64,000 bases of DNA from assembly GCF_006345805.1 (NCBI RefSeq), contig NC_042997.1:31930001-31994000 (forward strand), written 5' to 3'. The notes beneath the pieces were generated by a model that was not told the DNA's origin, searched no databases, and worked only from the letters and a program-made list of their open reading frames with translations. Each line of letters starts with the position of its first letter. Within the stretch, counting starts at the first letter, position 1. This document shows, in pieces, positions 3,341 through 61,650 of this stretch. The DNA comes from Octopus sinensis. Lineage: Eukaryota. The translations under genes were made by a program, and so were the position numbers.

Positions 3341-3390
<50 letters not shown>

Positions 3391-13185: not shown

Positions 13186-13200
13186 GTTCCACCTTCATGG
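13186..13200 (+). CDS. Candidate 15-nt microexon GTTCCACCTTCATGG of flotillin-1
   Basis: Branch-point-like motifs tgctaac (~13130) and cactaat (~13148), acceptor ctctctgcag, donor G|gtgagt. Length is a multiple of 3 and phase 1 matches exon 2, with no stop in that frame. No transcript evidence. Confidence 0.45.
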
Positions 13201-13293
13201 GTGAGTGGTAGCAATAGAAAGTGCATCTGGTTGTATGCTAAAAATGTGTGTAAATAATCTCTGCCCTTACCATCTACAGCAAATCTATGTAAT

Positions 13294-14166: not shown

Positions 14167-14242
14167 GATGCTTTCACAGTCAACCAGCATACATCCGAGG
14201 AGGGAGAGCTTTTGTTTGGCCTGGAATTCAGAAAATACAGAG
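14167..14242 (+). CDS. FLOT1: Flotillin-1 coding exon ('exon 2', 76 nt, phase 1 to 2): (G)CFHSQPAYIRGGRAFVWPGIQKIQ(R)
   Basis: Acceptor tttttttacag and donor AG|gtcagt. The peptide matches the flotillin-1 N-terminal segment (GGR-x-FVWP...Q-x-IQR) and its phase fits the next exon. Confidence 0.93.
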
Positions 14243-15194: not shown

Positions 15195-15639
15195 AGCCAT
15201 CTGGTGAAAGTAATGTGTTTTGGTATGGTTTTCAATAACAAATCTGATAATGTTAAGTATCATCAGTTGAGGGTTAAAGATCAGATCCACTCTAGTTTTC
15301 ATTATCTATATTGTCCAATGTCAAGGTGGCGAGCTGGCAGAAACGTTAGAGCGCCAGGCGAAATGCTTAGTGGTATTTCGTCTGTCATTACGTTCTGAGT
15401 TCAAATTCCGCCGAAGTCGACTTTGCCTTTCATCCTCTCGGGGTCGATAAAGTACCAGTTTCGCACTGAGTTGATGTAATCGACTTAATCCCTTTGTCTG
15501 TCCTTGTTTGTCCCCTCTTTGTTTAGCCCCTTGTGGGTAGTAAAGAAATATATATTGTCCAACCTCACTGTCTTCAATTTGGTTTATGTGCCTCTCCCCA
15601 CCTGTAGTCATGAATGTTGGGTACAATCATGAATACATG

Positions 15640-21629: not shown

Positions 21630-21995
21630 GAACCAGCTGATCGTGGCCGTTGCCAGCGCCGCTCCAACTGGCCTCCATGCCGGTGGCACGTAAAAAGCAC
21701 CATCCGATCGTGGCCATTGCCAACCTCGACTGGCTCCCATGCCGGTGGCACGTAAAAAGCACCATCCAACCGTGGCCGTTTGCCAGCCCCGTCTGGCACC
21801 TGTGCCTGTGGCACGTAAAAAGCACCCACTACACTCACGGAGTGGTTGGCGTTAGGAAGGGCATCCAGCTGTAGAAATACTGCCAGATCAGACTGGGCCT
21901 GGTGCAGCCTCCTGGCTTCCCAGACCCCAGTTGAACCGTCCAACCCATGCTAGCATGGAAAGCGGATGCTAAACGACGACGATGATGATGATGAT
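21630..21995 (+). mobile_element. Family C retroelement
   Basis: Reverse-complement copy of 13294-13735 ending in (gat)n. Confidence 0.8.
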
Positions 21996-22547
21996 TATTA
22001 TTATCATTATTATTATTTCTGCTTCTGCTACTGGTACATTGATTAAAAATTAAAGCAATGAAATTGTAGCATTTTTCTCTTTCTTCTATAATAGCAAATA
22101 TTAATTACTTTGATTAAACTTCTATCTTTGAATATTCTCTACTGAATTGGGAGACTCTTTGGCTGTCACCAAATAAGGTACTTCCTTTGTCATGCTCTTA
22201 AATGCATACTGCTAGAGCTAAACTACATTTCTGTCTCCTAACTAGTTGCTGTAATGTTATTTCCTTTTCTCTTTCTCACAGTACATGAATACACATTCTT
22301 ATAAGTGTGCATGCATATTTACATGTAAGCATGTTCGTTTGCTTGCTTGTACAAATGTTAGAAGAAAAACTTGTTTCATCCTGGGAATCTTTCTGATGTG
22401 GGAAATAAAACAAGTAAAAATAAAGCTTTGTTGTTCAAACATCTAAAGTGAAAATCTATATAGAACTGGTATTGTTCAGAGAATCCTTATTAGATTTTAA
22501 TGTAAACATGACATAGGTTAATAGGTTATATTTTTAACTTTCACTAA

Positions 22548-22772
22548 GGCGGCGAGCTGGCAGAAACGTTAGCAGGCCGGGCGAAATGCGTAGCCGTATT
22601 TCGTCTGTCGTTACGTTGTGAGTTCAAATTCCGCCGAGGTCGACTTTGCCTTTCATCCTTTCGGGGTCGATAAATGAAGTACCAGTTAGGCACTGGGGTC
22701 GATGTAATTGACTTAACCCCTTTGTCTGTGCTTGTTTGTCCCCTCTGTTTAGCCCCTTGTAGGCAATAAAGG
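22548..22772 (+). mobile_element. Family B SINE (other copies ~15327-15550, 17499-17715, 56170-56400 on +; ~40200-40560 and 45345-45560 on -)
   Basis: ggcggcgagctggcagaaacgttagc...gagttcaaattccgccgaggtcgactttgcctttcatcctttcggggtcgataaa...agccccttgt; repeated with high similarity. Confidence 0.85.
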
Positions 22773-23318: not shown

Positions 23319-23476
23319 GAGTGGCTGTGTGGTAAGTAGCTTGCTAACCAACCACATGGTTCCGGGTTCAGTCCCACTGCATGGCATCTTGGGCAAGTGT
23401 CTTCTGCTATAGCCCCGGGCCGACCAATGCCTTGTGAGTGGATTTGGTAGACGGAAACTGAAAGAAGCCTGTCGTA

Positions 23477-23540
<64 letters not shown>

Positions 23541-23732
23541 CTGTGTTTGTCCCCCTAGCATTGCTTGACAACCGATACTGGTGTGTTTACGTCCCCGTCA
23601 CTTAGCGGTTCGGCAAAAGAGACCGATAGAATAAGTACTGGACTTACAAAGAATAAGTCCCGGGGTCGATTTGCTCGACTAAAGGCAGTGCTCCAGCATG
23701 GCCGCAGTCAAATGACTGAAACAAGTAAGAGT
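23319..23732 (+). mobile_element. Family A tRNA-derived SINE with internal (TA)n
   Basis: A/B-box-like head (tggctgtgtgg ... ggttcagtcc), body gcatcttgggcaagtgtcttctgctatagcc, tail ...ccagcatggccgcagtcaaatgactgaaacaagta. Confidence 0.85.
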
Positions 23733-24005
23733 ATTTGAGTCTTTTGCTTATGTTCCTGTTAAATCTTCTTTTGCCCCCCCCCATCTCTTTGTTACACTTT
23801 CATCTTGCTCTTGTCTTCTCTCCTATTCTCCCTATTACACTGCATATGTTTTTATATTCAATTCCTCCCCTTTAACTTTTATCATTCTACTCTTCCACCA
23901 CAAGGATGGCATCATATCTTTCCATATTCTATATTTCCTACTATCACCCTTCGTTTTACAGCCATAACTCTCTCTCTCTCTGTCTGTCTGTGTGTGTGTG
24001 TGTGG

Positions 24006-24073
<68 letters not shown>

Positions 24074-24523
24074 CTGTGTTTGTCCCCCTAGCATTGCTTG
24101 ACAACCGATACTGGTGTGTTTACGTCCCCGTCACTTAGCGGTTCGGCAAAAGAGACCGATAGAATAAGTACTGGACTTACAAAGAATAAGTCCCGGGGTC
24201 GATTTGCTCGACTAAAGGCAGTGCTCCAGCATGGCCGCAGTCAAATGACTGAAACAAGTAAGAGTATTTGAGTCTTTTGCTTATGTTCCTGTTAAATCTT
24301 CTTTTGCCCCCCCCCCCATCTCTTTGTTACACTTTCATCTTGCTCTTGTCTTCTCTCCTATTCTCCCTATTACACTGCATATGTTTTTATATTCAATTCC
24401 TCCCCTTTAACTTTTATCATTCTACTCTTCCACCACAAGGATGGCATCATATCTTTCCATATTCTATATTTCCTACTATCACCCTTCGTTTTACAGCCAT
24501 AACTCTCTCTCTCTCTGTCTGTC

Positions 24524-24568
<45 letters not shown>

Positions 24569-24580: not shown

Positions 24581-25924
24581 TTTTTAACATGCACTATTAC
24601 CTGTCTCTATTTTTATTCCTCACTCACTCCATCTTAGTATCAACATATTCATTACTGTCCTTCACACTCTTCCTTTTTTCTCTCTCTGAAGACACAGACA
24701 TTCATTACTTTCTCTTCTATTAGTCTTCCTTGATATACATCACTCTCCTTCACTTCCATCACTCCATTTCTCTTTATCATTTACTAAAAACCTATAGCTT
24801 ACCTGTCTATCACTGCATCTCTTTCATCACTCTGCTTCCCTCTTTGTCACTACACTTCTTCTAGTTATTGAAGAAGTGGAAACAACATAGAATGAAGAGG
24901 ACTTCTTAGTTTTGCAGAAAACAAGGTAACTTCTCTAAAGCTGGTGCTGTTATGAAATGCACCCAGTACACTGTAAAATAGTTGAGCAAGATGCATTCCT
25001 TTAGCTCAACCAAATAAGAACTGGCTTGGACCCATGACAATCCATTTACCCATCTCAGTTTTGAAAGCAGACATAAAATTGTGGTAATTGAAACCTTTAT
25101 TCACTATTACAAATGTTTGCCCCTTTTATTTGTATCATTCCCCTTATAAATGCTGTTGATTTGTTTCCATTAAAGCGTTTGTCATTTGTGGCTGTCATCA
25201 GGTGTGATAGTGTGGAGAATACTTTTAAAGACTATATAATCAATTGGAGAGGAAGGGGGGGGGGGCTTTTCTTTATTGATTTTTTTTTTTCATTTGTTGT
25301 ATTTTTGTATTTTTTGTTTGTTTTTTTCATTTTCTTTGAGTTGTTTGCAAAACTAAGTGTTTCCATTAAAAGTTAACTCATTCAGATGTTTTAATGAATT
25401 GATTAAGTAAGTTACTAGATGTCCTACAGATAAAGAGATGGGTAATGTGTCTATCTAAGACTGCTTATTTGCTATTCGTCAATTTACACCACTAATCTTG
25501 TATTATATTGCTTTTGCTCACTCACACACACACACACACACAAATATTACGTGTGTGCATGTGTGTGTTTTTGTGTATTTGTCTTCTGTCATCTTCTAAA
25601 TAGTGCTTTTGTGCAGATATACAAAGTCATGTGAAAGTCGATAAAAAGTAGACTCGTACATTTTATTGTCTTCAACGACGTCTTTGTGTGTCTAAACAAA
25701 AACACTCATTAGAAAATATACGCTCAATATTCGATACTGTGTTTTACCCATTACAAAAATAGAAGAAACATTTAAAATTAAACTACATATATGTATATAT
25801 ATATATATATTATCATCATCATCATCGTTTAACGTCCGCTTTCCATGCTAGCATGGGTTGGACGGTTCAACTGGGGTCTGGGGAACCCGAAGGCTGCACC
25901 AGGCCAGTCAGATCTGGCAGATCT

Positions 25925-26695: not shown

Positions 26696-26854
26696 TATTA
26701 AAAGTAATCGAGTCAATGTCCACTCAGAGTGACCGATGGTTTTGCACCCACAAAGGCTTTACAGTCTGAAAAGATGTCCACAAAGCTAAGGCCTTTGTGG
26801 ATGTAAAACCATTGGTCACTCTATGATCAGACAGTGACTCGATTACTTTTAATA
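26696..26854. repeat. Palindromic MITE-like element
   Basis: 20-bp perfect outer arms tattaaaagtaatcgagtca/tgactcgattacttttaata and 32-bp inner arms with 3 mismatches. Confidence 0.8.
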
Positions 26855-26870
26855 TATATATATATATATT

Positions 26871-28055
26871 TAGTCATCCTAGTGTGTGTGTATGTATGTA
26901 TGTATGTATATATATATATATATATATACATATATATATAGTCATCCTCGTGTATGTATATATACATATATATAGTCATCCTCGTGTATGTATATATACA
27001 TATATATAGTCATCCTCGTGTATGTATATATACATATATATAGTCATCCTCGTGTATGTATATATACATATATATAGTCATCCTCGTGTATGTATATATA
27101 TATATATATATAGTCATCCTCGTGTATGTATATATACATATATATAGTCATCCTCCTCGTGTGTGTATATATCCATATATGTATAGTCAACCTTGTGTGT
27201 GTGTGTGTGTATATATACATATATATAGTCATCCTCGTGTGTGTATATATAACATATATAGTCATCCTCGTGTGTGTATATATACATATATAGTCATCCT
27301 CGTGTGTGTATATATACATATATATAGTCATCCTCGTGTGTGTATATATACATATAATAGTCATCCTCGTGTATGTATATATACATATATATAGTCATCC
27401 TCGTGTGTGTGTATATATACATATATATAGTCATCCTCGTGTGTGTGTATATATACATATATATAGTCATCCTCGTGTGTGTGTATATATACATATATAT
27501 AGTCATCCTCGTGTGTGTGTATATATACATATATATAGTCATCCTCGTGTGTGTATATATACATATATATAGTCATCCTCGTGTGTGTATATATACATAT
27601 ATATAGTCATCCTCGTGTGTGTATATATACATATATATAGTCATCCTCGTGTGTGTATATATACATATATATAGTCATCCTCGTGTGTGTATATATACAT
27701 ATATATAGTCATCCTCGTGTGTGTATATATACTTATATAGTCATCCTCGTGTGTGTATATATACATATATAGTCATCCTCGTGTGTGTATATATCCATAT
27801 ATGTATAGTCAACCTTGTGTGTGTGTGTGTGTGTATACATATATAGTCATCCTCGTGTGTGTATATATACATATATAGTCATCCTCGTGTGTGTATATAT
27901 ACATATATAGTCATCCTCGTGTGTGTATATATACATATATAGTCATCCTCGTGTGTGTATATATACATATATAGTCATCCTCGTGTGTGTATATATACAT
28001 ATATAGTCATCCTCGTGTGTGTATATATACATATATAGTTATCCTCGTGTTTGTG

Positions 28056-28056
<1 letters not shown>
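26871..28056. repeat. Minisatellite, ~34 copies of a 32-36 nt unit agtcatcctcgtgtgtgtatatatacatatatat
   Basis: Directly counted core agtcatcctc separated by TG/TA runs. Confidence 0.95.
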
Positions 28057-28105
<49 letters not shown>

Positions 28106-28154
28106 TACCTCATCCTTGTTTGTGTGCATGTGTGTATATATATATATATATATA

Positions 28155-29059: not shown

Positions 29060-31660
29060 ATATTATTTGACAGAAGTGCTTCAGTACTGCACTAAGTGAT
29101 GTATTTAGGTTTCATCAACCACGAGTGTTTTAACTGAGGTTAACTTAAATCTTCATTCTCTTTGGGAGTCAATAAGGAAATTGGAACAGAAATATACCAG
29201 GTATTATTTTATGTTGCAAAACCTAAGAAGGAACATCAAAATAGGCATCCCATTGGATACTGTTCTTACTAGTAAACCATGTCTTTTACGAACTTGTTGT
29301 CAGTAGCCCATATTTTTTAGTGTAACAAATGAAGTACTGCTGTGACAGCAGTAAGGATGAAGTAAAATACCACAAAGGAATGTTCTGCATACTAAAGCAT
29401 TTGATTGGTGGAGTCTCAGATGTTATCTAGTGAGTTGAATAACTTTGCTTCATTTAGAAGTATATTCTTTGCTGATGAGGTTTAATAAGTTCGAAGCTTA
29501 TGTTGCTTTCACCAATTGATTTTAAAGATAAAATCACCTCCCATCTACGTTGTCTTTCGAAAACTTTGATTAGCTGAATTGGTGCTATTTCCATTACTGT
29601 TTGATTTCATATTGAATTATTGAAAAAAACTGACCAATCCTAGTTCAATTGTTAACCTTGCAATACGCAAGTAACACTATTTTAAGGTTTATCTTTTTAT
29701 TCTCTTGATTCAAGATTTAACATTCTACTAATTGCATGGAGAGTTTCAGTTAATAAAAGTATTTCAATTCAATATGAGTGACCCTATCAGAAGTACAACT
29801 GTGTATATTTCCCATGACCAGACCTGTTTCCATAGAGTGAAAAATGAACGACACTGCTTTCATGATGGTGGCATTCATTTACAACTGTTACATAATGTCA
29901 AGACAAGGGCACACACACACCTACATACATATATATAATATATACTTTTACTTGTTTCAATCATTCGACTATGGTCATGTTGCAGCACCACCTTTAGTCG
30001 AACAAGTCAACCCAAGGAAATATTCTTTGTAAACCTGCTACTTTATCAATCTCTTTTGCTGAACTGCTAAGTTACAGGGATGTAAACACACCAACATCAG
30101 TTGTCAAGCGATGGTGGGGGAACACACACACACGTGTGTGTTTGTGTGTGTTTATATATATATATATATACATACATACATACATACACACACACAACGG
30201 GCTTCTTTCAGTTTCCTTCTACCAAATCCACTCACAAGGCTTTGGTCGGCCCAAGTTATAGTAGAAGACACTTGCCCAAGGTGCCATGCAGTGGGACTGA
30301 ACCCGGAACCATGTGATGGGCTTCTTTCAGTTTCCGGCTACCAAATTCTCTCATAAGGTTTTGGTTGCCTTAGAACTATAGTAAAAGACACTTGTCCAAG
30401 GTGACATGCTTTAGGACTGAACACAAAACCATGTACCTGGGAGTCAACCATGCCAGTGCCAAAGGAAGATGCTTTTTTAGTTGTTGACCACATAAAGACC
30501 ATCCATGGAGGTAGATGTAGCATCTATCTTCAGTAAGTAATGAAATTATACTCCAAAGCTTCTGTTACAGGTATTTGACATCTTGACTTTCAGTTTAGTA
30601 AATACACAGGTTAACTACCACAATTTCATTCATAATATTCTGAATGATGTGTGGCTGTGGTCATTCATAGTAAAATACAAATACTGTTTAACCCCAGGTT
30701 TTTTCATCCTGATTGAGCAGACTTGTGATCAAAGGTATTCTAAATGCTGCCATCTCATATCTTTCAGACATAATATAATTAGGATTACATTATCCAATGT
30801 ACTGTTTTGTAAATTTTTTTTAAGACAGTAAAGAGAATTGTGGGGAAAGTGATTTAACTCCTATTTCAAGTATGTTATGTAACCACAGAGGTTCCTGCTT
30901 TGGTTCTGAGTCTGTTAGTGAAGCATAGTGGATTTCATATTGAGGTATTGGAAAACTGGCCAATGATAGTTTAAGCTTTAATCTTGCCAGTAACCATATT
31001 CTAATGTTTACATTTTATTCTCTTAATTTAGTTTTGTTTGAATGTCTTTAATTTGTATTTCCACTGACCAATGAGTGAATGGTTAGCTTAGGTAATGAAT
31101 AAAATGGAAGGTGTCTGTTGGAAATATGACTTTGTAAAGGTTAAACTCTTGAAATTGGATTCAATCTAATCAATTAACTTGGAAGAGCCTTCAAGATTAA
31201 TTAGCTATTATCCTCTCCTGAATCCGGATATATAGTGTACTTTCTGAAGTTTAAACAAAGAGAATACCTCAAGGCATGTTCTTCTTAGCAATTGATCTGA
31301 CTTTATTAGGTTGGCTTTCAATTAGCCTTTTTAATTAGCTGACATGTATTCATTACTAAAGCAATTTATATTCTGTCTCCAGTTCCCAAGTATAATTTCT
31401 GTAATTCTATCAGAAATATTATATTCTCTCTCTTTATTCTTTTACTGGCTTCAGTCAGTATGTTATGGACATGCAATGGCACCACCTTCTGGAGATTATA
31501 TCAATTATATTAGTTTTAGTACTTTGTCAATATTGTTTTATGAATATTGAGGGGAAGAAGGACAAAAATCAATTTCGGTCTCATGAATATAAAAAAAACA
31601 CCATAAAGTTTTTTTGTTTAATGCTCCACTGAGTCTGCCATCAACCTATCAAAGTATGTA

Positions 31661-32317: not shown

Positions 32318-32698
32318 GGCGCAGGAGTGGCTGTGTGGTAAGTAGCTTGCTAACCAACCACATGGTTCCGGGTTCAGTCCCACTGCGTGGCATCTTGGGC
32401 AAGTGTCTTCTGCAATAGCCCTGGGCCGACCAATGCCTTGTGAGTGGATTTGGTAGACGGAAACTGAAAGAAGCCTGTCGTATATATATATGTGTGTTTG
32501 TGTGTCTGTGTTTGTCCCCCTAGCATTGCTTGACAACCAATGCTGGTGTGTTTATGTCCCTGTTACTTAGCGGTTCGGCAAAAGAGACCGATGAATAAGT
32601 ACTGGGCTTACAAAGAATAAGACCCGGGGTCGATTTGCTCGACTAAAGGCGGTGCTCCAGCATGGCCGCAGTCAAATGACTGAAACAAGTAAAAAAGA

Positions 32699-34880: not shown

Positions 34881-36711
34881 GGAAGTTTCATCATGATATT
34901 GTATAGAAAAATCTTTAACTGATCACAAAGTTGGCATTGAACTAACTTCATAGTGATCGGAAATAAATTGATGAGGATAAATTTTGATTCTAAAGTTTGA
35001 ATCCATGAAGTTCTGAAGGTGGTCAAAATACTATATGGATATGACAATGTATTTTGTTTCCCATATCTTGAATTATTCTTTCATATATATGTGTGTGTAC
35101 TTGTGGGTACGTAACCATGTGTGTTCTATATATTTGACTGAACATTCTATAGAGTTTCTCTCTAAGATGCTTGGCAAGAAATTTGGTCTTAGCATTTGAA
35201 ACAGATACTGTATTGATCATTTAATAATTAAATATATACACAGTTTATTGTTCACAATCTGGTCGTTGATGCTTTACAGATGAGCAATTCAGAGGTTTGC
35301 TCAGTTGGATGCCTTGCTATGTGAATTAACATAGTATATCATGGATACAAATATATACTCTTTAATGTAATTTTCAGGCAGAATCATCAGTGCAGTTTAG
35401 ACTTTTGAGTTTCCATCTCCCCAGTTTTGCTCACAAGGCTGGAGTTGACACTGAATTACCATTGGCATTAGGAAGGGCATCCAGCCGTAGAAACATTGCC
35501 AGATCAGACTGGGCCTGGTGCAGCCTTCTGGCTTCCCAGACCCCAGTTGAACCGTCCAACCCATGCTAGCATGGAAAGCGGACGCTAAATGATGATGATG
35601 ATGAGATAAAAACCAAGACATCAAGATTGCAATAACAAACTTCTTAACTATTTGCTCATGCTCCATCAACACTGTGCATGCATGTACAGGTCTGTACATA
35701 GCTACAGTTGGAGCTATGTGCAAAAGGTCGAACAAAAAAAACACTGTTTACATATAGCAAATTTGAAGCATCATGGACTACACTTGTCTGTCCTGGATTA
35801 ATGCCTCATAGCATATTGGCTAAATAAACCCACTCTCCGAAAGAAAGATATCAAGAGCATTACCATGGATGGTGTAGAGACTGCCAAAATTCTGGCTATG
35901 AAAACCTTAAAATCAGATGGGTTGCTACAACAGCAGTATTCTATGAAATGTACTTTAAGCTTCAGCCCAACAAACTCAAAATATGCTGTGACTGCTGTGT
36001 GAAAAACTTACCTGCATGATGCTTAATACTTTCACACCTGTACAAATTCTTTCTTTGCCTGCTGCCAAGCCCAACTCATTTGGTAGATGTGTTTTTCTCT
36101 TTGCTGTAAATACATGAAACAAATTTTCAGATGCAACAATTGTTAGACCTCTCTTTGAGTTCATACATCTTATGAGACTGTATTGTTCTCAAATGCTTAT
36201 AATGGGTCCTGATTTTAAGCATAATGCCAGCAATTTTGAGGGAAGGGGTTTAGTCGATACCATCAGTTCTAATACTTGATTGGTCCTATATTTTCTAAAC
36301 CCTGGAAGAATTAAAGTTAGTTGACGTTGGCAAGGTTGGAACTCAGATTGTAAAGAACTGGAACATTTTCCAATGCTGTAACACTTCTTCTGCCATCTTG
36401 CTGTCTTTCAAATGCATATAATAAAATAGCAAAAAATGACAGTCGTTTTGTAGATGTTTGAAAGATTTTGAAGAATGAATTAAAATAGCATGTGTGTTTA
36501 ATAAATGGACAAAATAATTTGTAGAAAAAATAAATTCTATAAACATTTGTTTATCCATTTTTTTTTTTTTTTTTTTTTTGTTCTAAATTTTGAAAAGTAA
36601 AAATGATTTTTGACAGGTCTTTACTAAATATTAGAATAGGGGTTCAAACCACATTTGCGAATTGCATTTTATCCTCAATACCATGACTCTCTTTTTTGCT
36701 CGAACCTGTAG

Positions 36712-36802
36712 ATTGTCTTTAGCAACTATGAGCTTAGCTATAGAAAGCCAACATGTCTACACAAAACAGGGCGTGGCTATCTCCATGACAGGTATTGCAC
36801 AA
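36712..36802 (+). CDS. FLOT1: Flotillin-1 exon 3a (91 nt, phase 2 to 0): (R)LSLATMSLAIESQHVYTKQGVAISMTGIAQ
   Basis: Acceptor ctgtag and donor CAA|gtaagt; open frame. Homologous to the flotillin-1 ISLNTxTL...VYT..GV.ISVTGIAQ segment. Confidence 0.9.
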
Positions 36803-38457
36803 GTAAGTGGTTTTGTCCCTTGTTGTAATGGGTACATTTCTAAATCCTACCAAAAATGCAAGTAGTTGGCAGCTTCTTAGTTTTCAATCCTAGTGGTTAC
36901 CTGAATAGCTTTGTGTTCTTTTGTTGTTGTTGTTATAAATGTTTTCCTATTTTTATATTTTGATTTCTCCACCCACTAACCTTTCCCTTTTGCAGATAGA
37001 ATGTTGTTGCTTTCTATATATATTTATTTATTTTTAATGTGTTGTTGTACTTTACATTGATTATATTTTGTTATTGCAAATTATAATTCTTATGCAGCAT
37101 GGATATTAGTAGTTACAGCTCATTTAAAGAATTATCATTTTATTTATTTATTTTCCCAATGATATTTCCTTTGGTGTGGGCATTACTTTTAAACTTAAAA
37201 CAGATAGCAAACATTTCGTTTTGTCATGGTTGCAGTGTAAATCTTGATCAGCTTAAGAATTCAAATTTTAAGTTTCATATGATAGAACCAAGCGCAAGAT
37301 ATATTTATTGGCCACAAAACTCCATTGTAGTAGGACCTAGGAAAGCATTATCACTCACTCCCTTTCTCCATCTCTCTCCCTCTCTCTCTTTCTTTCTCTC
37401 TCTCTCTCTCCCTCTCTCTCTCTCTCTTTCAACAATCAGCCTTGTTAAAATAGTATGTATGAACACATAGAGCAATGCCCTAAACTTGTGGATAGTTATT
37501 TAAAATAGTTTCTTAGTGATGTCTCTTGGTGCTTTTTCTTAATTCATGGTGATTCATATCTATTCAATTCCTTTTTAATTACCCAAACTTAGCTATTATA
37601 CTACACCAGCCACATTGCCGTATTTTTATGTTTAATACTTAACCTAAAATTTCTCTCCCCACTATATATATATTTTTTTAAATAAGGAATAATGCATGAG
37701 GATTAGTCATATTCATGGCAGTTTATTTATTGGTCCTGAAAATATTTTATTACCATTTACCACCACTACTGCTACTACTACCTTAGCATAAATTGAACTC
37801 AGAATGGTGAGGTATTGAGAAACATCTATTCCAATTGATTACTGTTTATTCCAAATTTTCTATACTTTCTGTAAGATTGTGATAATATGAATTCATTTTA
37901 TTGTACTTTTCTGGAATATGTATTTGTGTAAGCATAGGTAAAGACGGGGCATAAAACATGAAAAAAATGAAGCAACTGCCAAGTGGGACTCGACTCATAT
38001 TTTCCAGCTCAGTGCTCAACAAGAAGTGCAAGTTTGAGTCCCACATAAGGTTGTTTCATTTTTTTTTTAAATACGTAATTGTTCACTAAGTACGCGCATA
38101 AACACTTGATTTAAATAAAAAAAATATATATACATACAAAGTAATTTTTAATAATTCAAATGTAAATTATTTCAGCAAAAAAATTTTTTTTTATATTGAA
38201 TCAATTAACTACTCAAAGAATACCAATTTTGATTTACCTTCTGTGAAATTTTCTAAAACAAAATTATCAAGATTTTCTTTTAATGCATGCAATAAATAAT
38301 TCACGATACTGTAAATAGGTATTTTTGAGAAGAAATCAAAATTTAAAAACTTAGATGATCTCTAAGGATTCTGAACATTTGAAACTTTATTGCATGTAAG
38401 TAATAATAATATCTGGCAAATATAATTTTTTCCATTATAGTCTCTAGCTAAAAATAA

Positions 38458-38511
<54 letters not shown>

Positions 38512-38530
38512 TGGAAATTAAGCTAAATAC

Positions 38531-38687
38531 CAGTATGAATATTTAGTTTCTACATACGTTTCACCATTGCAGTTAATCGGAACTCAGCAGCATTGGGCAT
38601 CAGGTGCATTTGGATGTCTAATTGCAGTGTATCAGCCAAAATAACTGCAATGGTGTAATATATGTAGAAACTAAATTTTTTGTACTG
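38531..38687. repeat. Palindromic element between exons 3a and 3b
   Basis: atttagtttctacata..caccattgcagtta versus taactgcaatggtg..tatgtagaaactaaat. Confidence 0.75.
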
Positions 38688-38995
38688 TTTACTCTTTCAC
38701 TTGTTTCAGTCATTTGACTGCGGCCATGCTGGAGCACTGCCTTTAGTCGAGCAAATCGACCCCAATTTCCAATGTATATGTTCTGTATATCTTAAGTAGT
38801 AAGTAGAGTGGTTGACTGGATAATAATCTACATAAAGCACCCAGCACACACTGTAAAGTGGCTGGCATTAGGAAGGGCATTCAACTTTAGAAACCAGGCC
38901 TAATCGGATGGGGACCTGGTACAGCTTTCCAGCTGCCAGCTCTGGTGAAACTGTCCAATTCATGCCAGCATGAAAAAACGAATGTTAAAAGATGA

Positions 38996-39035
<40 letters not shown>

Positions 39036-39484
39036 AATAGATTTAATAATTTAGGAGTTATAGGATAAAAATATATTATTTTAGTCGGGGTTTTTTCAAT
39101 TTATTTTCTGCTCCGATAATAAGAAAATAGTTGACAAAACTATTGACTTAAGCATAGTCTCAATTATTAACAATCAAAACTTATTTGAGTAAATAGCGGC
39201 TATGTTTCTAAGTGACTGTATTTTCTTGATAAATATTTGAAATATTTACCCTTATAAATTAAAACTAACTCCTGGAAATTGACTTAGAATCATATACTTT
39301 CAAGGAGTTTGTATTTAGTCATATTTAATTTTTTTTTCTTAATTTTTTAAATAAAAAAAAAAGTATTGGTTATGAATAAATTATCAGAAATTCTTGCATG
39401 TGGCTATTTTCCAAATAAGCATGCTTTTTCCACTGTTAGACATGTCTTATGCCAGGGCTTGATACCAAGTAGTATTTGTTACAG

Positions 39485-39575
39485 ATTGACGCTAAATACT
39501 ATGACTTTAGCAATAGAAAGTTCCCAAGTGTACACACAATTAGGGGTGGCTGTTTCAGTGACAGGAATTGCACAG
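39485..39575 (+). CDS. FLOT1: Flotillin-1 exon 3b (91 nt, phase 2 to 0): (R)LTLNTMTLAIESSQVYTQLGVAVSVTGIAQ
   Basis: Acceptor ttgttacag and donor CAG|gtaagt; open frame. Closer to the canonical LNTMTL/VTGIAQ flotillin-1 sequence than 3a is. Confidence 0.93.
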
Positions 39576-42500
39576 GTAAGTCTTCCTTTTATTTGCTGTA
39601 CATTATTTTATATTTTTGTTTGTGTTTGTTTTTTTGTTTTTTTTTATATATATATACATACCTTCCTTACCCACTCACTGTTGCAATGATAACAACACCG
39701 TTTCTTTATTGTCTGCTTACACTAGTCTACTCCTTTTTTTCTTATTTTTATTTACAAATAAATAAATTAAAATGCTTGAAGATTACATGTTTTATATTGT
39801 TTGACTTTTTCATCAGTAAATTTTATTAAAGTACTTTCATCAGTATATTAACCTTGCTGTAATGGCTAGTCATAACAGATGAGTGTTTTTCAACTGAAAT
39901 GTTGCTTGACAGTGTTAGGGAATACTGCTAAACAGTTAAATTTAATACACTGAATCATAAAAGATGACAAATGGGTCGAACAAAATAAAAGGTAGAGCAG
40001 TAGACCTTTTAAGTTTTCACTCTTGTCTTTTTACTTAGTTTTCAAATCGTGCTCATGTCAGCTTGGCATTTTGGATTTTTAGTGTTTAAAAACTGTATAA
40101 AATATATTTTCTGAGTTCAGTTCAGTTTGCCAAACTTTTACCATAGGAATTTGTAGCTTTCTGCCAGTTTAATAAATCAATATTCTTTTCTACTCTAGGG
40201 CACAAGACTTGAAATTTTGGGGGAGGTAGGGGCCAGCCAATTAGATCGACCCTAGTATGCAACTGGTGCTTATTTTATCAACCCCAAAAGGACGCAAGGC
40301 AAAGTCAACCTCAGAGGAATTTGAACTCAGACTGTAAAGACAGACAAAATGCTGCTAAGCATTTTGCCCGGCATGCTAATGTTTCTGCCAGCTCGTCATC
40401 TTTTTTGGGGAGGGGGCCAGTCAATTAGATTCACCCCAGTAGGCAACTGGCACTTAATTTATTGACGCCAAAAGAATGAAAGGCGAAGTCAACCTTGGCG
40501 AAATTTGAACTCAGAGCGTAAAGACTGATGAAATACCACTAAGCATATCGCCTGACGTGCTATTAATAAATCAATATTGCACTAAAACAGATGGAGAAAG
40601 GCTGAGTTGGTAAAGTGTCTCCTTTCAATATCATCTTGCCGAAAACCATCCTTAGGTCTAAGAAGAAAGGCTTCCTTAAAGGTTCTAAATTAAAACCTTC
40701 CCAACTACTGGCATACTTCAATGCAAGGAAAGCTAAAAAGAGAAAAAAAAAAGGTAGTGGGGAGAGATTGAACCTTTAGCATTTAAACTGGCCATACCTG
40801 GCCCAAATATTCTGTTCTATGTTCAAACTAACCAGATCCAGCCTCTCACACCTACTCTACAATGTTGTTCTAAACATGAGCAATCACATCATTGAAATCT
40901 TGAAGCTATGAGATAATGTATGATTTATTGAAAACAATATCAATAAATAAACATTACATTTGAGAGAGTAATCTGAATGCTAAAGGGTTAAAGTAAAAAA
41001 TTTAGAATGACATTTTGCCTTGTTTTACTAATACTAATGATAAAATTATACTTTCTTAATTTTTAAGATACTCGAGTATTGTTATGGATTTTCTAATGCC
41101 ATAAAATACATTTTTTAAAACCCACATTGTACCAAGGTACTCCTTGAGGTACCCTAATGCATAATAGCATTACTGCATTTGAGAACTAGTACTCTATATT
41201 TTGTGTTGCATCCCACAAATAATAGTCTGACATGGATTTAGTCAATGTTTCTTGGCTTCCTGTTCATTCGATAGATATCTAAAAGCTTCAGTGATTAGAT
41301 ACACTTCTTTAAAATGTGGAACTGTCTTGCAACAAAGGTTGATAAAAACCAAAGTTTGAGAAATTTTGCTAAAATTCCAATGTTTTATTCTTTCTTTTAA
41401 ACATTACTTATATAAACAATACTGATACTTAATAACTTCCAATTTGGAGATCTTTTTAATTTGATTCATTAATATACAAAAGAAAATAAAGAAAACACAT
41501 GAAAGCAACTATGTAATGTCGTTGTTTACTGAAATATAATTTCATTTTGATCATAATACAGTATGATCCCTTGTGTGGTATAAATGAATATAGTTAAAAA
41601 AAAGAGTTCTTTTGAAATAATTTCAATTTCATTCATAATAGTTTCTATTAACTGTTTTTTTTTTTTTTTAACCCATTTTAGCCATAAATTATTAACCAAT
41701 TAAATGCTTTATTCAAACTGGTTAGGAATAACAATTACAAAAACAATTTGAATTGTTTACTGAAATGTTTTGCAATTTGAACACTTATAATTTTGTTTTT
41801 GTCAAATCCAAAACGTTTTTATTGATACTAATTAAGTTTTCATCAAATTCATTGAGACTAGTATTGTACATTCGAAAAAAGAACCATCTTAATTTTCAAA
41901 ATAAGCTTCAGGTCATAGATCATTGACATTACATTAAATATATTACAGTTTGAATAGGATAATATCTCAGCTAATGATTTCTGCATATATAAATATCATG
42001 TTATGTTTTATATCTTTTGCTTTTTTTTTTTTTTGTGTGTGTTGATTTAAGATCATTTAGATCTTCAAGTATGATAAAGGAACATTTTATGCATTTCTAA
42101 TTATGAATGAGGAACTAGGTGGGGGGCAGGATGAAAAGTCGTTGCCTTCATTTCAGTTATCTTTGATAGGTTATTCTTTAGTTTTCCTTAATTCTTTGTA
42201 TAGTGATTTCCAAATTCATCAGAAACTGAGGAGGTTGGGTAAGGATTAGTGAACAGTGTATAATAAGATAGACCATATTTTGTGTATATATCCTTTACAA
42301 TATATGTAACCATGAAAATGCAATCAAACTTGGGTATATGCTATACTTTTGATTGTAAATTTTTTGGTAAATTTTGCATAAAAATTAATCATGCCTAATT
42401 GATTCAATAAATACCCAGCCTAAATGATAGATTAATTAATGAACACATATTCACAGCATGTATCCTGATGATACATCCCTGTTCCATGCTGGTATAAGTT

Positions 42501-42900: not shown

Positions 42901-44258
42901 AGTTCTGGCATTTGTGTAACTCTCGATGCCAAAGTTTGGGACAATGTTTGTTTTAACATGGTTTCTACTGCTGGATGCCTGTCCTTGCAGAGTATACTGA
43001 GTGTTTTCTTTTTTTTATTTATTGTGGTGCTATCACTAATGAGGTTGGCATGCAGCTTGCAAGAAAAAGACTGAATGAGCTAGCTACAAGAGAGAGGGAA
43101 GTAGCTTTGTTCCTGCAGACGAGGGATTAAAAAGTATAAGAAGCCAGGCAACCGGTTGCTTGCTGTTGAGATTTTATCCCAATGTTAGATTACATATTTA
43201 GTAAAACAACTATTGATTATTTGGTTTTACTTGAGATTTAACATCTGCTTAGAGCTACAATAACTATGAGGCTAAAGGTTAACAAATGCCTGCTAAACCA
43301 CAAATTTAAGCTATTACTGCAGTCCTGTTGTTTTCATTGGCATTGCTTGCTGTCGTATAGCTGACAGACAACAGGTTCCATTCTTACTTTGGAGTTTTAT
43401 AATTATCAAAAGAATTTGGAAATGACTTTAAAAAATAAGGAATAACCAGTCATGATTGTTTTTAATATTTATATTGTTGGACACTCGCGGAGTGGTTGGC
43501 GTTAGGAAGGGCATCCAGCTGTAGAAACACTGCCAGATCAGACTGGAGCCTGGAGCAGCCCCTGGCTTCCCAGACCCCGGTTGAACCGTCCAACCCGTAC
43601 TAGCGCGGAAAACGGATGTTAAACGATGATGATGATGATGAGCAACAATCTTTACAGTTAAATGTCTGTAAATGGGCCATCTCAAGCAATATGTAAATAT
43701 CCAGATATGTGCAAATATTTATTTTACCATAAGGCATAAGAATTTATAAACTTTGAGGGAACAAGAGAATTCTGTTTTTGTTTTTGGTTGAAACAGTGGA
43801 TCTCAAAGCAGATGATATTGCTCAAAGTAACAGCCTCTAAATATTGGGTCAAAAAGCCCTTTGGTTTGAACATCTGTGGATTTGTTTCATAGATACGGAT
43901 TAGTATCCTATGGGTTGCCTTTGACTTTTTTGATCTAAAGGTGTTTTTAGCTCAATATTATACATTTATAGCTTTATCTGCTTCAAGGTCCACCCACTGT
44001 TCCCAAGAAGAATTTTGTGTATGTGTCTTTTACTTTCAGTCATTAGACTGCTGGCATGCTGGGGGCACCACCATGAATTTTTAGTCTAGTGAGTCAACTC
44101 CAGTACTGACTATTTTAAAGCCTGGTACTTATTATATCAGTTACTTTTACTGAACTGCTGAGTTATGGAGGGTGTAACCACCAACACAGGTTGTCAAACA
44201 GTAGTGGGGGACACACACTATGTATGTATGTATGTATGTATGTATGCATGTATATATA

Positions 44259-44289: not shown

Positions 44290-47200
44290 CATACATACAC
44301 ACACACACACACAATGGGCTTCTTTCAATTTACACCTACTTCCACTTACAAAGTTTTGATTGGCCTAAGGCTACAGTAGAAGACACTTGCTCAAGGTGCT
44401 ATATAGTGGGACTGAACCTGGAACAATGTGGTTGGAAATCAGACTTCTTTTCACGCAGCTACACCTGTGCATATATATATATGAATGTCAGTACCTTGTA
44501 TCTGGAAATTTCATCTCCAAGTTATAGGCTTGGACAAGGATTTTTTAAAGAAGACTAGCAGTTACCTATGTATGCAAGTCTCTTTTCTCCATACCTACAA
44601 CATCAAAGAGAAAGGCAAACCTGATACTACTTGGCATTAGTGTTATTGCAGGTATTACTGAAAGAACACATAGCCTGTATGAATACAATAAAGCATCTCA
44701 TCCAACACTCTTACTGTTCCACCAATCTGTAACCCTGGACTAGGTATTTTATTTTTTTTATCAACCCTTAAAGGATAAAAGGCAAAGTTGATTTCACTGA
44801 AATTTGATCTCAGAGCTTAGAGTGTTGGAATAAATACAAATTATTTTATCTGGTGCTCTAAAAATTCTGCCAATCTATCTCCATTTGTTCAGTTAACATC
44901 TGTTTTTCCATGCTAGCACATGAACAGGGGCTTCATCTGAAGCAGGATTTTATGGCTGAACCTTCTGCTAGTCACCAACGCTTTCTTGCTTTTCAAGTAA
45001 AAGACTTCACAGCTTTTTGAAGTTGTAGAACAAATGGGACATAATGTCAATAAGGAATGTAAATTACATTCACTGTTTTTTTCTCAAGCAAAGCTGTTGG
45101 ATGTAAATTCCCCCCACCACACACATGCACACATATGACAGGCTTCCTACAGTTTCTGTCTGTCAAATTCACTTGCAAACGTTGGTTGCTGCAAAGTGAA
45201 TTCTTTAACTACATAGCCATACCTGTGTATGCACATACATACACACATGCTTTTGTGTATTGTTTTAAAAATAGGGGATCTTTAAGCCAGTTGTCTTTTC
45301 TACAGCTATCTATTGTAAAAAAGCAAAAATATTAATACTAGTAATTCTTTCTACAAGGCCTGAAATTTGTAGGGAGGGAGCTATTCCATTACATCAACCC
45401 CATTGCTCAGCTGGTACTTATTTTATCAATCCCCAAAAAGATGGAAGGCAAAGTTGACTTCAGTGGAATTTGAACTCGGAATGAAATGATGTACAAAATG
45501 CCACTAATCATTTTATCCAGCATGCTAACAATTTTGTCACCTCACCACCTTAATGATAACGATGATATTAATTATAATTCTACTATAGGCACAAGGCCTG
45601 AAATTTTAAAGGGAGAGAGCTAGTCAATTACTATGACCCAGTGCTTGATTAATCATTAAGCAAAATAAGCATGTGCTTAGGGCATCAGGGAAAGTGGTGG
45701 TGGGGGACACCACATAAATGGTAATTGGTTTATGGTACAAAAAATCACTTTGAATTTGCTAGAATGATATTCGGGATGCCTTATCTCTACTAAGTATAGA
45801 AGCAGATGAGTTACGTGAGATTAATTTTAAGGAGCTGATCAGAGGCTGCAATTTTAAAAAATGTGGGAGAAAGCTTTTTGAATATAAATAAAGTGGAACA
45901 TTATTTTCCATCTTACTGTTAGTTTTGTTTCATTTTGAAAACTAAAAATTTATATTATGTTTTATTATTGTTTATATTTTGAATTCCATATATATGGGGG
46001 CACCAATATCTTCCAAGCTCATAGGGCCTCAATGGGTCTTAACCCAACTCTGCTATGACCCCTAGTGCTCGATTGGTACCTATTTTATCAACTCCAAAAG
46101 GATAAAAAGGCTAAGATGACCTACCACGGCAGAATTTGAACCCATAGCATAAAGATGCATGAAATGCTTCTTAGAATTCTGCCAACTCTCCACCTGCCCA
46201 TCCAACCACTCCTGAGCACCCATAGCAGAACCTTCCACTATCCCTCATGTTCCTACCCACACACTCTCTATATCCTCACCGATCTACCATACCCACCTTC
46301 CAGGCACTCCCTCGGCACCCCATGCTGCAGTCACTTCTTCCCCATCTTTAAACATCTCCCCTCACATTCTTATAGAACATTCCCCTCTATCCCCTCTGTA
46401 TCACTTATACTCCCCCTCCCCCACTGTTCCTCCATCAACCCCCTTGGAGCCTGGTGCAGCCATCTGGTTCGCCAGTACTCAGTCAAATCGTCCAACCCAT
46501 GCCAGCATGGTAAGCGGATGTTAAACGACGATGTTAATGATATCTTTCCTTTCCTACTGGGGTAGCCATGTATCTCCTCTATAGTTAAACCTTTCAACTG
46601 GCACATCTTCTCCTCCATCAGTTCTACTTCCTCTCCCAGTTCAGAGGTCTTTATCTTGTAAATTTCTTGGTGGCCTCACAGATTTTAGTGCCACATAACA
46701 AGCACCCAGTACACTCTGTAAAATGGTTGAGATTAGGAAGCCTTAGAAACCACACCAAAGAAGGCAATGGAACCTGGTACAGCTTGCCTAGCTCTTGTCA
46801 AACTATCCAACTCGTGCTTACATGGAAGATGTAAATGTTAAATGATGATGATGATGATGATTGAGTAAAAATATTATATTCAGTTAAGTCTCTGAAAATC
46901 TTTTCGATTTATTTAAAATATTCTCTTGAATATCAGGCATTTAAATTGCAACATGACAAAAATTTAAGATGGAAAATATGAATAAATAAGTTTTTTCACA
47001 GATTTGGTGCTCTATGATATTATCATCATCATCATTGTTAACTACATGTGTCTTGCAATTCTTGTACATGTTTAATGCATTGATGCTTATCAGCAAGAGG
47101 CAGTCCAGTTCTGCAGTAATAGCATAGCTAATTTGAAGCTTGTTACTTGGTTACAGAAACTGAAAAAAAGGAAAAACACAGATAATTTCATTTACATATG

Positions 47201-48790: not shown

Positions 48791-48934
48791 ATTAAAGTAC
48801 AAGGTTCCAATGATGAAATGCTTCACACTGCGTGTGAACTATTCCTTGGCAAAAATGAAAATGAGATCGAGAAGGTTGCAAAAGAGACACTTGAAGGTCA
48901 CCAGCGTGCCATAATGGGAAACATGACTGTTGAG
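48791..48934 (+). CDS. FLOT1: Flotillin-1 exon 4 (144 nt): [48 protein letters not shown]
   Basis: Acceptor ccattgttag and donor GAG|gttggt. Contains the diagnostic [10 protein letters not shown] and MLxxACxxFLGK motifs of flotillin-1. Not listed in the ORF track. Confidence 0.96.
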
Positions 48935-53152: not shown

Positions 53153-53272
53153 GAAATCTATAAGGATCGCAAGAAGTTTTCCAAAGCTGTGTTTGAAGTT
53201 GCCTCTTCGGATTTAGTCAATATGGGGATCTATGTTGTTAGCTATACATTAAAGGACATTAGAGATGATGAG
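53153..53272 (+). CDS. FLOT1: Flotillin-1 exon 5 (120 nt): [40 protein letters not shown]
   Basis: Acceptor ctcatttcag and donor GAG|gtaagc. Near-identical to the flotillin-1 [35 protein letters not shown] motif. Confidence 0.97.
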
Positions 53273-61554: not shown

Positions 61555-61650
61555 GGTTACCTTAAGGCACTGGGCTTAAAACGTACTGCTGAAGTCAAAA
61601 GGGATGCCAGAATTGGTGAGGCTGAAGCTAAAAGAGATGCTGGAATACGA
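61555..61650 (+). CDS. FLOT1: Flotillin-1 exon 6 (96 nt): [32 protein letters not shown]
   Basis: Acceptor ttcttgacag and donor CGA|gtgagt. Start of the flotillin coiled-coil domain ([16 protein letters not shown]). Confidence 0.96.

What the first reader, a model, noticed from the sequence alone, without database searches (positions are those of the whole stretch)
36712..39575. Tandemly duplicated, mutually exclusive SPFH-domain exons (3a/3b) in flotillin-1
Seen: two 91-nt exons 2682 nt apart, both phase 2 to 0 with GTAAGT donors and open frames. They share 21/30 aa and 65/91 nt. Eight codons differ synonymously and there are no indels or stops, which suggests an old duplication with both copies kept under selection. 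Including both reads 3b out of frame and hits GAT TAA at the start of exon 4 (stop 48793-48795); skipping both gives a TAA inside exon 4. So only one-of-two yields protein. A 2.7 kb spacer and GT-AG ends on both rule out steric-clash and U2/U12 mechanisms. Established (from memory, verify): vertebrate FLOT2 has alternative versions of the homologous exon; I do not know of this for FLOT1. Inference: two isoforms differing in the membrane-proximal SPFH strand (ATMS/QH/KQ versus NTMT/SQ/QL), possibly convergent with FLOT2.
Basis: partly seen in the sequence, partly recalled or inferred. Interest (0 to 1): 0.9.

Follow-up and report, generated by a model that had tools for sequence, protein, structure and literature searches.

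The report
Duplicated alternative exon pair in flotillin-1
An animal flotillin-1 gene carries two intact, diverged copies of one 91-base exon, of which only one can be spliced in per transcript; this is an ordinary kind of alternative splicing, notable mainly because the matching exon of the sister gene FLOT2 was duplicated independently in chordates.

Summary
Window 36712-36802 (3a) and 39485-39575 (3b) are two 91-nt exons of a flotillin-1 orthologue. Both are phase 2-0 and bounded by AG and GTAAGT. They share 65/91 nt and 21/30 aa, with 8 synonymous and 9 replacement codons and no homology in the flanking introns. Including both gives TAA at 48793-48795, and skipping both gives TAA at 48912-48914.

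Both copies look selected: dN/dS is 0.15 at dS about 1.4, and a neutral-decay simulation gives P about 3e-4. Both isoforms fit the Band_7 profile.

Flotillin-1 loci of at least three other unnamed invertebrate lineages carry 2-4 intact 91-nt copies of the same exon. Some also have duplicated exons 2, 4 or 6.

FLOT1 is in neither table. The FLOT2 pair clusters apart from all FLOT1-type copies (99% bootstrap), so the two duplications were independent.

I found no docking/selector RNA pairing. Frame incompatibility is the only exclusivity mechanism the sequence shows. Expression could not be tested.

Verdict: a real feature, a new member of a known kind, of moderate interest.

The parts
14167..14242 (+). 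Flotillin-1 exon 2 (76 nt, phase 1 to 2). It encodes (G)CFHSQPAYIRGGRAFVWPGIQKIQ plus the first two bases (AG) of the Arg codon that either exon 3 copy completes. It is the common upstream donor (gtcagt).
   Evidence: tblastn with human FLOT1 residues 12-40. Splice sites read directly.
36712..36802 (+). Exon 3a (91 nt, phase 2 to 0). It encodes (R)LSLATMSLAIESQHVYTKQGVAISMTGIAQ. The acceptor follows a good pyrimidine tract and the donor is CAA|gtaagt. It is the more divergent copy relative to other species.
   Evidence: (E = 5.6e-7 to human FLOT1 40-72).
36803..39484 (+). Intron of 2682 nt between the two copies. It is repeat-rich (CT and TA microsatellites). It shows no homology between the copies' flanks and no convincing complementarity to the neighbouring introns.
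39485..39575 (+). Exon 3b (91 nt, phase 2 to 0). It encodes (R)LTLNTMTLAIESSQVYTQLGVAVSVTGIAQ. The donor is CAG|gtaagt. Its pyrimidine tract is the weakest of the window's exons, and two AGs lie at -16 and -13. It is the copy closest to flotillin-1 exons of other species.
   Evidence: (E = 1.1e-7).
48791..48934 (+). Exon 4 (144 nt, phase 0 to 0), the common downstream acceptor. It contains both premature stops: TAA 48793-48795 when 3a and 3b are both included, and TAA 48912-48914 when both are skipped.
53153..53272 (+). Exon 5 (120 nt), a single copy. It encodes [40 protein letters not shown].
61555..61650 (+). Exon 6 (96 nt), a single copy in the window. It encodes [32 protein letters not shown]. 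The rest of the gene lies beyond the window.

Best explanation
Exons 3a and 3b are a tandemly duplicated pair of mutually exclusive exons of a flotillin-1 orthologue.

Shown by the sequence:
- Each pre-mRNA can give a full-length protein only if exon 2 (donor at 14242) is joined to exactly one of the two copies and that copy is joined to exon 4 (acceptor at 48791).
- Because 91 is not a multiple of 3, double inclusion shifts the frame and stops at 48793-48795. Double skipping stops at 48912-48914.

Inferred:
- The aberrant products encode truncated proteins and are expected to be removed by nonsense-mediated decay.
- The choice between the copies is probably made by trans-acting splicing factors acting on unequal 3' splice sites (3a strong, 3b weak). 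Competing RNA helices are unlikely to be involved.
- Consequences for membrane binding, cage assembly or hinge behaviour are unknown.

The two proteins differ at nine positions, in human FLOT1 numbering 42, 44, 47, 53, 54, 58, 59, 63 and 65. All lie in one structural unit of the SPFH/Band-7 domain: a loop followed by a beta-hairpin. The changes are concentrated near the hairpin turn and in the second strand.

The duplication is old (dS about 1.4). It is independent of the duplication of the homologous exon in chordate FLOT2.
For: - Anatomy: same length, phase, strand and GT-AG borders, with open frames.
- Frame logic.
- Selection on both copies: dN/dS is 0.15. The simulation gives P(9 or fewer replacements and no stop, given 26 substitutions) = 1.5-3.7e-4. 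Homology stops at the exon borders.
- Both isoforms fit Band_7 (92.3 and 86.9 bits, cut-off 23.6) and flotillin-1.
- Comparative evidence: in host-genome contigs from ENA metagenome assemblies, the same exon of flotillin-1 is present as intact 91-nt copies bounded by AG and GT. There are 2 copies in L001, 4 in L003, 2 in L004 (the same pair in L013) and 2 in L005.
- Paralogous copies in those loci also have low dN with saturated dS.
- The two exon-6 copies are each conserved copy-for-copy between L005 and L006. This shows that such flotillin-1 exon clusters persist through speciation.
- Precedent: the homologous FLOT2 exon pair is RNA-seq-verified, differentially included and seen in proteomics.
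- Structure: in an AlphaFold2 model the exon maps to strand-turn-strand with pLDDT above 90. Differences between paralogous copies fall at the same exon positions (9-14, 18-19, 22-25) in these loci and in FLOT2.
Against: - There is no transcript evidence of any kind for this species. The protein collection held no sequence closer than 87% identity over part of exon 4.
- No orthologue of 3a specifically was identified elsewhere. The 30-residue tree is unresolved: 3a+3b monophyly has 8% support and 3a+Intoshia 53%. The age of this particular duplication relative to speciation is therefore unknown.
- The selection test rests on 30 codons.
- 3a is the less canonical copy (A44, M65).
- NMD was not tested.
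Confidence: 0.75

Rival explanations
1. One copy, most likely 3a, is an unused relic of a tandem exon duplication. The gene then makes a single protein from the other copy, and the intact frame and splice sites are residual.
For: - There is no expression evidence.
- 3a is less like flotillin-1 exons of other species (15-21/30 identities, against 18-25/30 for 3b).
- No clear orthologue of 3a was found.
- In L006 one exon-4 copy appears frame-shifted, so exon copies in this gene can decay. That contig has only 6x coverage.
Against: - dS is about 1.4 while dN/dS is 0.15.
- The neutral-decay simulation gives P about 3e-4.
- The acceptor, the GTAAGT donor and the frame are all intact, and 3a has the better pyrimidine tract.
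- The 3a isoform scores higher than 3b against Band_7.
- Multiple intact copies recur in other lineages.
Confidence: 0.15
2. The exons are mutually exclusive, but exclusivity is enforced mainly by competing intronic RNA base-pairing of the docking/selector type (as in Dscam1, 14-3-3xi or ATE1). On this view frame incompatibility is only a backstop.
For: - This mechanism is common for tandem-duplicated clusters (PMC6071210 and PMC7797038, abstracts).
- Other species have flotillin-1 clusters whose exon lengths are multiples of 3 (exon 4 of 144 nt, exon 6 of 96 nt). The frame cannot enforce exclusivity there, so some other mechanism must exist in this gene family.
Against: - Within 3 kb on each side and in the middle intron, the best complementary matches are AT-rich, 11-14 nt long and at chance level (E of 0.025 or more). 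No middle-intron site pairs with both flanks.
- The four-copy cluster of L003 has no shared selector-like motif next to its copies.
- Long inverted repeats do exist, but they are dispersed SINE-like elements.
Confidence: 0.08
3. The second copy is an assembly artefact or a collapsed or duplicated haplotype, so there is really only one exon 3.
For: Intron 2 contains a perfect 533-nt tandem duplication (23508-24004 and 24041-24539, 100% identical). Local assembly quality is therefore not beyond question.
Against: - The copies differ at 26 of 91 nt, with a synonymous bias.
- Their flanks are unrelated.
- Independent assemblies of other species show the same architecture.
Confidence: 0.01

Closest known systems
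Chordate/human FLOT2 mutually exclusive exon pair. Sources: Kassiopeia/Hatje et al. 2017 (PMC5740500, Dataset EV2/EV4/EV5) and Martinez-Gomez et al. 2022 (PMC9741552, Table S2).
   Same: - It is the homologous exon of the paralogous gene, with the same length (91 nt) and the same phase (2-0).
- It encodes the same part of the SPFH domain, running from just after the conserved Arg to ..TG(I/V)AQ.
- The two copies lie 1-3 kb apart, and the upstream copy is the non-canonical one.
- The differences between copies fall at similar exon positions.
   Different: - It is in a different gene (FLOT2, not FLOT1) and a different lineage.
- The FLOT2 pair forms its own clade (99% bootstrap), so the duplications are independent.
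- The FLOT2 event has RNA-seq and proteomic support, and it is marked tissue specific with a mark in the nervous-tissue column. The pair in this window has no such support yet.
Frame-enforced (NMD-backed) mutually exclusive exons that arose by tandem exon duplication, as defined by the Kollmar-group criteria. Those criteria are neighbouring exons with similar length, conserved splice-site pattern and reading frame, and sequence homology (abstract of PMC3923563; PMC5740500).
   Same: All the sequence criteria are met. The exon length is not a multiple of 3, so both double inclusion and double skipping give premature stops.
   Different: Nothing differs structurally. Only the transcript-level criterion (junction reads to each exon, none between them) is untested.
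Docking-site/selector RNA-structure systems (Dscam1 clusters, 14-3-3xi, human ATE1; PMC8042237, PMC6071210, PMC7797038).
   Same: A tandem array of homologous alternative exons from which one is chosen.
   Different: No competing complementary elements were detectable around 3a and 3b. The frame alone already makes the two exons incompatible.
Independent (convergent) duplication of the same exon in different lineages or paralogues. Examples are ion-channel genes such as SCN-alpha exon 5 (PMC12772994, abstract). Earlier work on convergence in ion channels is cited from memory and was not checked.
   Same: The same exon of related genes has repeatedly become a duplicated alternative pair.
   Different: Here the protein is a membrane-scaffold SPFH protein. 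In some invertebrates the duplication extends to 4 copies of exon 3, with further clusters at exons 2, 4 and 6.

Membership tests
Flotillin-1 (reggie-2) orthologue | Closer in sequence to flotillin-1 than to flotillin-2, with an SPFH/Band-7 domain | tested here: met
   One search gives 251 bits (E = 4e-74) to Flotillin-1 chains 9bq2_B and 9l3g_A, against 163 bits to Flotillin-2. One search gives Band_7 PF01145 at 92.3 and 86.9 bits (cut-off 23.6). Only residues equivalent to human 15-190 are in the window.
Mutually exclusive exons from tandem exon duplication | Adjacent exons of one gene on the same strand, with the same or similar length | tested here: met
   Both are 91 nt and 2682 nt apart, lying between exon 2 and exon 4.
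Mutually exclusive exons from tandem exon duplication | Same splice-site pattern and same reading-frame phase | tested here: met
   Both have AG|A..CA(A/G)|GTAAGT and both are phase 2 to 0.
Mutually exclusive exons from tandem exon duplication | Significant sequence homology between the exons | tested here: met
   65/91 nt and 21/30 aa. tblastn gives E = 1.1e-10. The alignment score is about 21 SD above shuffles.
Mutually exclusive exons from tandem exon duplication | Transcripts contain exactly one of the exons: junction reads to each exon, and none (or only unstable ones) joining the two | not testable with these tools
   No transcript or RNA-seq data for this organism were reachable. Protein-collection searches found no hit from the same species or a close relative.
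Frame/NMD-enforced exclusivity | Exon length is not a multiple of 3, so that inclusion of both exons or of neither creates a premature stop | tested here: met
   91 nt. The stops are TAA 48793-48795 (both included) and TAA 48912-48914 (both skipped). Degradation by NMD itself was not tested.
Steric-hindrance exclusivity | The intron between the two exons is too short (tens of nucleotides) for spliceosome assembly | tested here: not met
   The intron is 2682 nt.
U2/U12 spliceosome incompatibility | One flanking intron has U12-type signals (for example an /RTATCCTT donor) and the other has U2-type signals | tested here: not met
   The donors are gtcagt (exon 2), gtaagt (3a) and gtaagt (3b), and all acceptors are AG.
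Docking-site/selector RNA-structure exclusivity | One intronic element is complementary to alternative elements next to each variable exon | tested here: inconclusive
   Nothing above chance was found within 3 kb. Longer-range pairing or pairing that depends on G-U pairs was not excluded, and no close relative was available for a covariation test.
Same event as the chordate FLOT2 exon duplication (shared ancestry) | One FLOT1 copy groups with one FLOT2 copy rather than with its own paralogue type | tested here: not met
   The FLOT2 a+b clade has 99% bootstrap, and all 23 FLOT1-type exons fall outside it.

The most novel reading that the evidence does not exclude
The exon-3 hairpin of flotillins is a recurrent target for isoform diversification. 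It was duplicated independently in chordate FLOT2 and in several invertebrate FLOT1 lineages, with up to four copies of exon 3 and, in some species, additional clusters at exons 2, 4 and 6.

The proposed reason is that the hairpin tunes the contact between SPFH domains or the hinge around Y160 in the 44-subunit flotillin cage. Choice of exon would then change cage assembly, disassembly or membrane curvature in a tissue-specific way.
Probability: 0.2. Interest if true: 0.6.

Novelty: new member of a known kind. Interest (0 to 1): 0.4.

Why it matters
Tandem-duplicated mutually exclusive exons are among the few alternative-splicing events with consistent evidence of function at the protein level.

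Flotillin-1 and flotillin-2 alternate in a 44-subunit membrane cage whose structure was solved only in 2024-2026. Vertebrates vary the exon-3 hairpin of FLOT2, and these invertebrates vary the same hairpin of FLOT1, independently. This points to that hairpin as a functionally adjustable element of the cage, and it gives a natural pair of variants (nine substitutions) to test.

For annotation, it means two protein isoforms should be expected from this locus. Gene models that contain both copies or neither are errors or NMD substrates.

I found no paper that describes a flotillin-1 alternative exon pair. Public gene annotations of related species could not be consulted and may already list the isoforms.

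Tried and rejected
1. Transcript evidence. Two searches of the 5.8-billion-protein collection with exon 2+3a+4 and exon 2+3b+4 peptides returned mostly exon fragments called on genomic contigs. A few spliced or intron-poor sequences came from distant species. Nothing came from this species or a close relative, so usage of 3a and 3b could not be tested.

2. Naming the organisms. Cluster look-up gave no names, and a literature search for the ENA assembly accessions gave nothing.

3. Docking/selector structures. An RNAduplex scan timed out. A blastn-short search for complementarity gave only chance-level AT-rich matches. A search for a motif shared beside the four L003 copies found nothing.

4. 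Orthology of 3a and 3b with copies in other species. A neighbour-joining tree of the 30-residue peptides is unresolved except for the FLOT2 clade.

5. Exon 1. No GPNE-type N-terminal motif was found in 1-14166, so exon 1 probably lies upstream of the window.

6. Other content of the window. Ten ORFs of 120 aa or more have no Pfam match, and there is no Rfam family at gathering threshold.

7. Flank homology. The upstream flank gave an apparent z of about 3.4, but the match is poly-T/A low complexity.

8. Rbfox-like (U)GCAUG motifs. There is one TGCATG and one further GCATG 66-90 nt upstream of 3b. This is not significantly above the window background.
Full report
**Observation**

The window holds the 5' part of a flotillin-1 gene on the + strand. 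tblastn with human FLOT1 and direct reading of the splice sites give these exons:
- exon 2: 14167-14242
- exon 3a: 36712-36802
- exon 3b: 39485-39575
- exon 4: 48791-48934
- exon 5: 53153-53272
- exon 6: 61555-61650

All are bounded by AG and GT. Exon 1 is not in the window, and the 3' half of the gene lies beyond base 64000.

The encoded fragment, equivalent to human residues 15-190, matches PDB Flotillin-1 chains at 251 bits and Flotillin-2 chains at 163 bits. With either exon 3 copy it matches Pfam Band_7 well above the cut-off.

- Both copies are 91 nt and phase 2 to 0, with GTAAGT donors.
- They share 65/91 nt and 21/30 aa.
- Of the 30 codons, 13 are identical, 8 differ synonymously and 9 differ by replacement. 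There are no indels or stops.
- The spacer between them is 2682 nt.
- Including both copies gives TAA at 48793-48795, and skipping both gives TAA at 48912-48914.

The similarity is highly non-random. tblastn gives E = 1.1e-10, and the nucleotide alignment score is 41 against 8.3 +/- 1.5 for shuffles. It ends at the exon borders: the flanks share only low-complexity poly-T/A. No third copy of exon 3 and no duplicate of any other exon exists in the window.

**Are both copies functional?**

Nei-Gojobori estimates for 3a against 3b are dN = 0.21 and dS = 1.36, a ratio of 0.15.

I simulated one copy decaying neutrally by placing 26 random substitutions on it. That gives about 15.5 amino-acid changes on average. 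The probability of 9 or fewer changes with no stop is 1.5-3.7e-4.

Both copies keep consensus splice signals. 3a has the better pyrimidine tract. 3b has the weakest tract of the window's exons and two AGs at -16 and -13. The 3a isoform fits the Band_7 profile slightly better than the 3b isoform (92.3 against 86.9 bits). None of this fits a dead copy.

**Comparative evidence**

The protein collection contains no close relative of this species. It does contain exon-4 fragments called on long eukaryotic contigs inside ENA metagenome assemblies. I fetched 10 kb on each side of those fragments and searched them with the window's exon peptides.

Copies of the exon 3 homologue found:
- L001: 2 copies
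- L003: 4 copies
- L004: 2 copies (the same pair in L013, which is the same or a very close species)
- L005: 2 copies

Every one of these 10 copies, the single copy within reach in L002, and the window's two copies is exactly 91 nt, open and bounded by AG and GT. Paralogous copies within these loci have low dN and saturated dS.

Other flotillin-1 exons are duplicated in some of these genomes:
- exon 6 in L003, L005 and L006
- exon 4 in L005 and L006 (the L006 copy 1 looks frame-shifted on a 6x contig)
- exon 2 in L010/L011

The two exon-6 copies are conserved copy-for-copy between L005 and L006.

By contrast, insect-like sequences have exons 1-4 or 3-5 fused, with a single copy. A compact gene in L007-L009 has exons 2 and 3 fused, also with a single copy. 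The Drosophila list of tandem-duplicated exon substitutions in PMC9741552 Table S4 has no flotillin entry among the genes starting with E or F.

Duplicated alternative exon 3 is therefore a recurring and maintained feature of flotillin-1 in some invertebrate lineages. These lineages could not be named.

**Relation to FLOT2**

Hatje et al. 2017 list two FLOT2 exons of 91 nt and phase '2-0': ISLEIMTLQPRCEDVETAEGVALTVTGVAQ, annotated as constitutive, and LSLEVMTILCRCENIETSEGVPLFVTGVAQ, found in the adjacent intron. Both appear in the datasets of RNA-seq-verified and differentially included MXEs.

Martinez-Gomez et al. 2022 list FLOT2 among the events detected in proteomics. It is marked tissue specific, with a mark in the nervous-tissue column, and its age is at least Chordata. 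FLOT1 occurs in none of these tables.

The FLOT2 exon has the same borders as the window's exon 3, running from after the conserved Arg to ..TG(I/V)AQ. In a neighbour-joining tree of 25 exon peptides, the two FLOT2 exons form a clade with 99% bootstrap that excludes every FLOT1-type copy. The FLOT1 and FLOT2 duplications are therefore independent.

Within FLOT1 the tree is unresolved. 3a+3b monophyly has 8% support and 3a+Intoshia has 53%. I cannot say whether the window's duplication is shared with the other lineages.

**Mechanism**

*Shown by the sequence.* The 91-nt length makes the two copies frame-incompatible, so only single inclusion gives a full-length protein. A steric block is excluded by the 2682-nt spacer. 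U2/U12 incompatibility is excluded by U2-type GT-AG signals on all three introns.

*Tested without result.* I looked for competing RNA pairings. The best complementary matches among the middle intron and 3 kb on either side are AT-rich 11-14-mers at chance level. The four-copy L003 cluster shows no shared selector-like motif. The long inverted repeats that flank the cluster are dispersed SINE-like elements.

*Inferred.* Aberrant products are removed by NMD or give truncated proteins. The choice between copies is made by trans-acting factors acting on unequal 3' splice sites.

**Protein consequence**

An AlphaFold2 model of the 3a isoform fragment has mean pLDDT 78.8, and above 90 across exon 3. 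In it the exon forms a short loop, a strand (MSLAIESQHVY), a turn (TKQGV) and a second strand (AISMTGIAQ, continuing into exon 4).

In human numbering, the nine differences between 3a and 3b are:
- S42T, A44N and S47T, in the loop and the start of strand 1
- Q53S and H54Q, at the end of strand 1
- K58Q and Q59L, in the turn
- I63V and M65V, in strand 2

A cryo-EM study reports three relevant points (PMC13000311):
- The SPFH1 domains are half embedded in the membrane.
- They contact each other through less conserved loops.
- V61 and I63 lie in the hydrophobic core around Y160, at the SPFH2-CC1 hinge.

The exon is therefore more than a membrane-proximal strand. It runs from the membrane-side domain towards the hinge. 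Across the other loci and in FLOT2, paralogous copies differ at the same exon positions (9-14, 18-19, 22-25). What the substitutions do functionally is not known.

**Novelty and score**

This is a standard class of event: a tandem-duplicated, frame-enforced mutually exclusive exon pair. The gene is one for which I found no published description. The event parallels a documented one in the paralogue FLOT2. Public gene annotations, which may already list both isoforms, could not be consulted.

I rate it a new member of a known kind, with interest 0.4. The interesting part is the independent, repeated duplication of the same SPFH hairpin exon in both flotillin paralogues, with multi-cluster expansion in some invertebrates.

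Confidence that both exons are used in a mutually exclusive way is 0.75. The main rival, an unused relic copy, gets 0.15.

Noticed in passing
L003 2836-4874; L005 3882-4315, 9498-10159 and 13024-13526; L006 896-1570 and 3353-3906; L010 2780-2857 and 5723-5800: In other, unnamed invertebrate genomes flotillin-1 carries several clusters of duplicated exons. There are four copies of exon 3 (L003), two of exon 4 (L005; in L006 one copy looks frame-shifted on a 6x contig), two of exon 6 (L003, L005, L006; conserved copy-for-copy between L005 and L006), and two of exon 2 (L010/L011, GCA_029979725.1). Exons 4 (144 nt) and 6 (96 nt) are multiples of 3, so the frame cannot enforce exclusivity there.
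   Followed up: partly
window 15323-15475, 17495-17649 and 22541-22721 (intron 2) against 40229-40562 and 45378-45556 (intron 3b-4): Copies of a SINE-like element of about 150 nt lie in opposite orientation on the two sides of the 3a/3b cluster (76-82% complementary over 120-168 nt). Pairing between them would loop out both exons. This might favour skipping or back-splicing, but it is most simply explained as dispersed repeats.
   Followed up: no
window 23508-24004 and 24041-24539: A perfect (100% identical) tandem duplication with a period of about 533 nt in intron 2. It is either a very recent duplication or an assembly artefact.
   Followed up: no
window 26780-28111: A minisatellite with a period of about 34 nt (TATATACATATATATAGTCATCCTCGTGTGTG-like, more than 35 units) inside intron 2. 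TA, TG and CT microsatellites are frequent throughout the introns (for example CT repeats at 37348-37447, between 3a and 3b).
   Followed up: no
window 21846-21988, 35462-35604, 43496-43638 and 46398-46540; also 20018-20184, 23319-23485 and 32325-32491: Two further families of dispersed repeats of about 140-170 nt (up to 94-98% identical), with inverted copies at 25813-25905, 30319-30434 and 44341-44482. The introns are largely repeat-derived.
   Followed up: no
window 6594-6780 and 8455-8641 (- strand): Two identical stretches 1861 nt apart gave identical weak tblastn hits. They mark a repeated element of about 1.9 kb or less in the region upstream of exon 2. It is not related to exon 3.
   Followed up: no
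window 39395-39423 and 39460-39484: Exon 3b has the weakest 3' splice region of the window's exons: the pyrimidine fraction is 0.53 and AGs lie at -16 and -13. One TGCATG and one further GCATG lie 66-90 nt upstream. This is a possible but statistically unsupported hint of Rbfox-type regulation.
   Followed up: partly
window 1-14166: No flotillin exon 1 (..CGPNEA..VVSG motif) was found, and there was no Pfam-matching ORF and no Rfam family. Intron 1 is probably longer than 14 kb and the start codon lies outside the window.
   Followed up: partly
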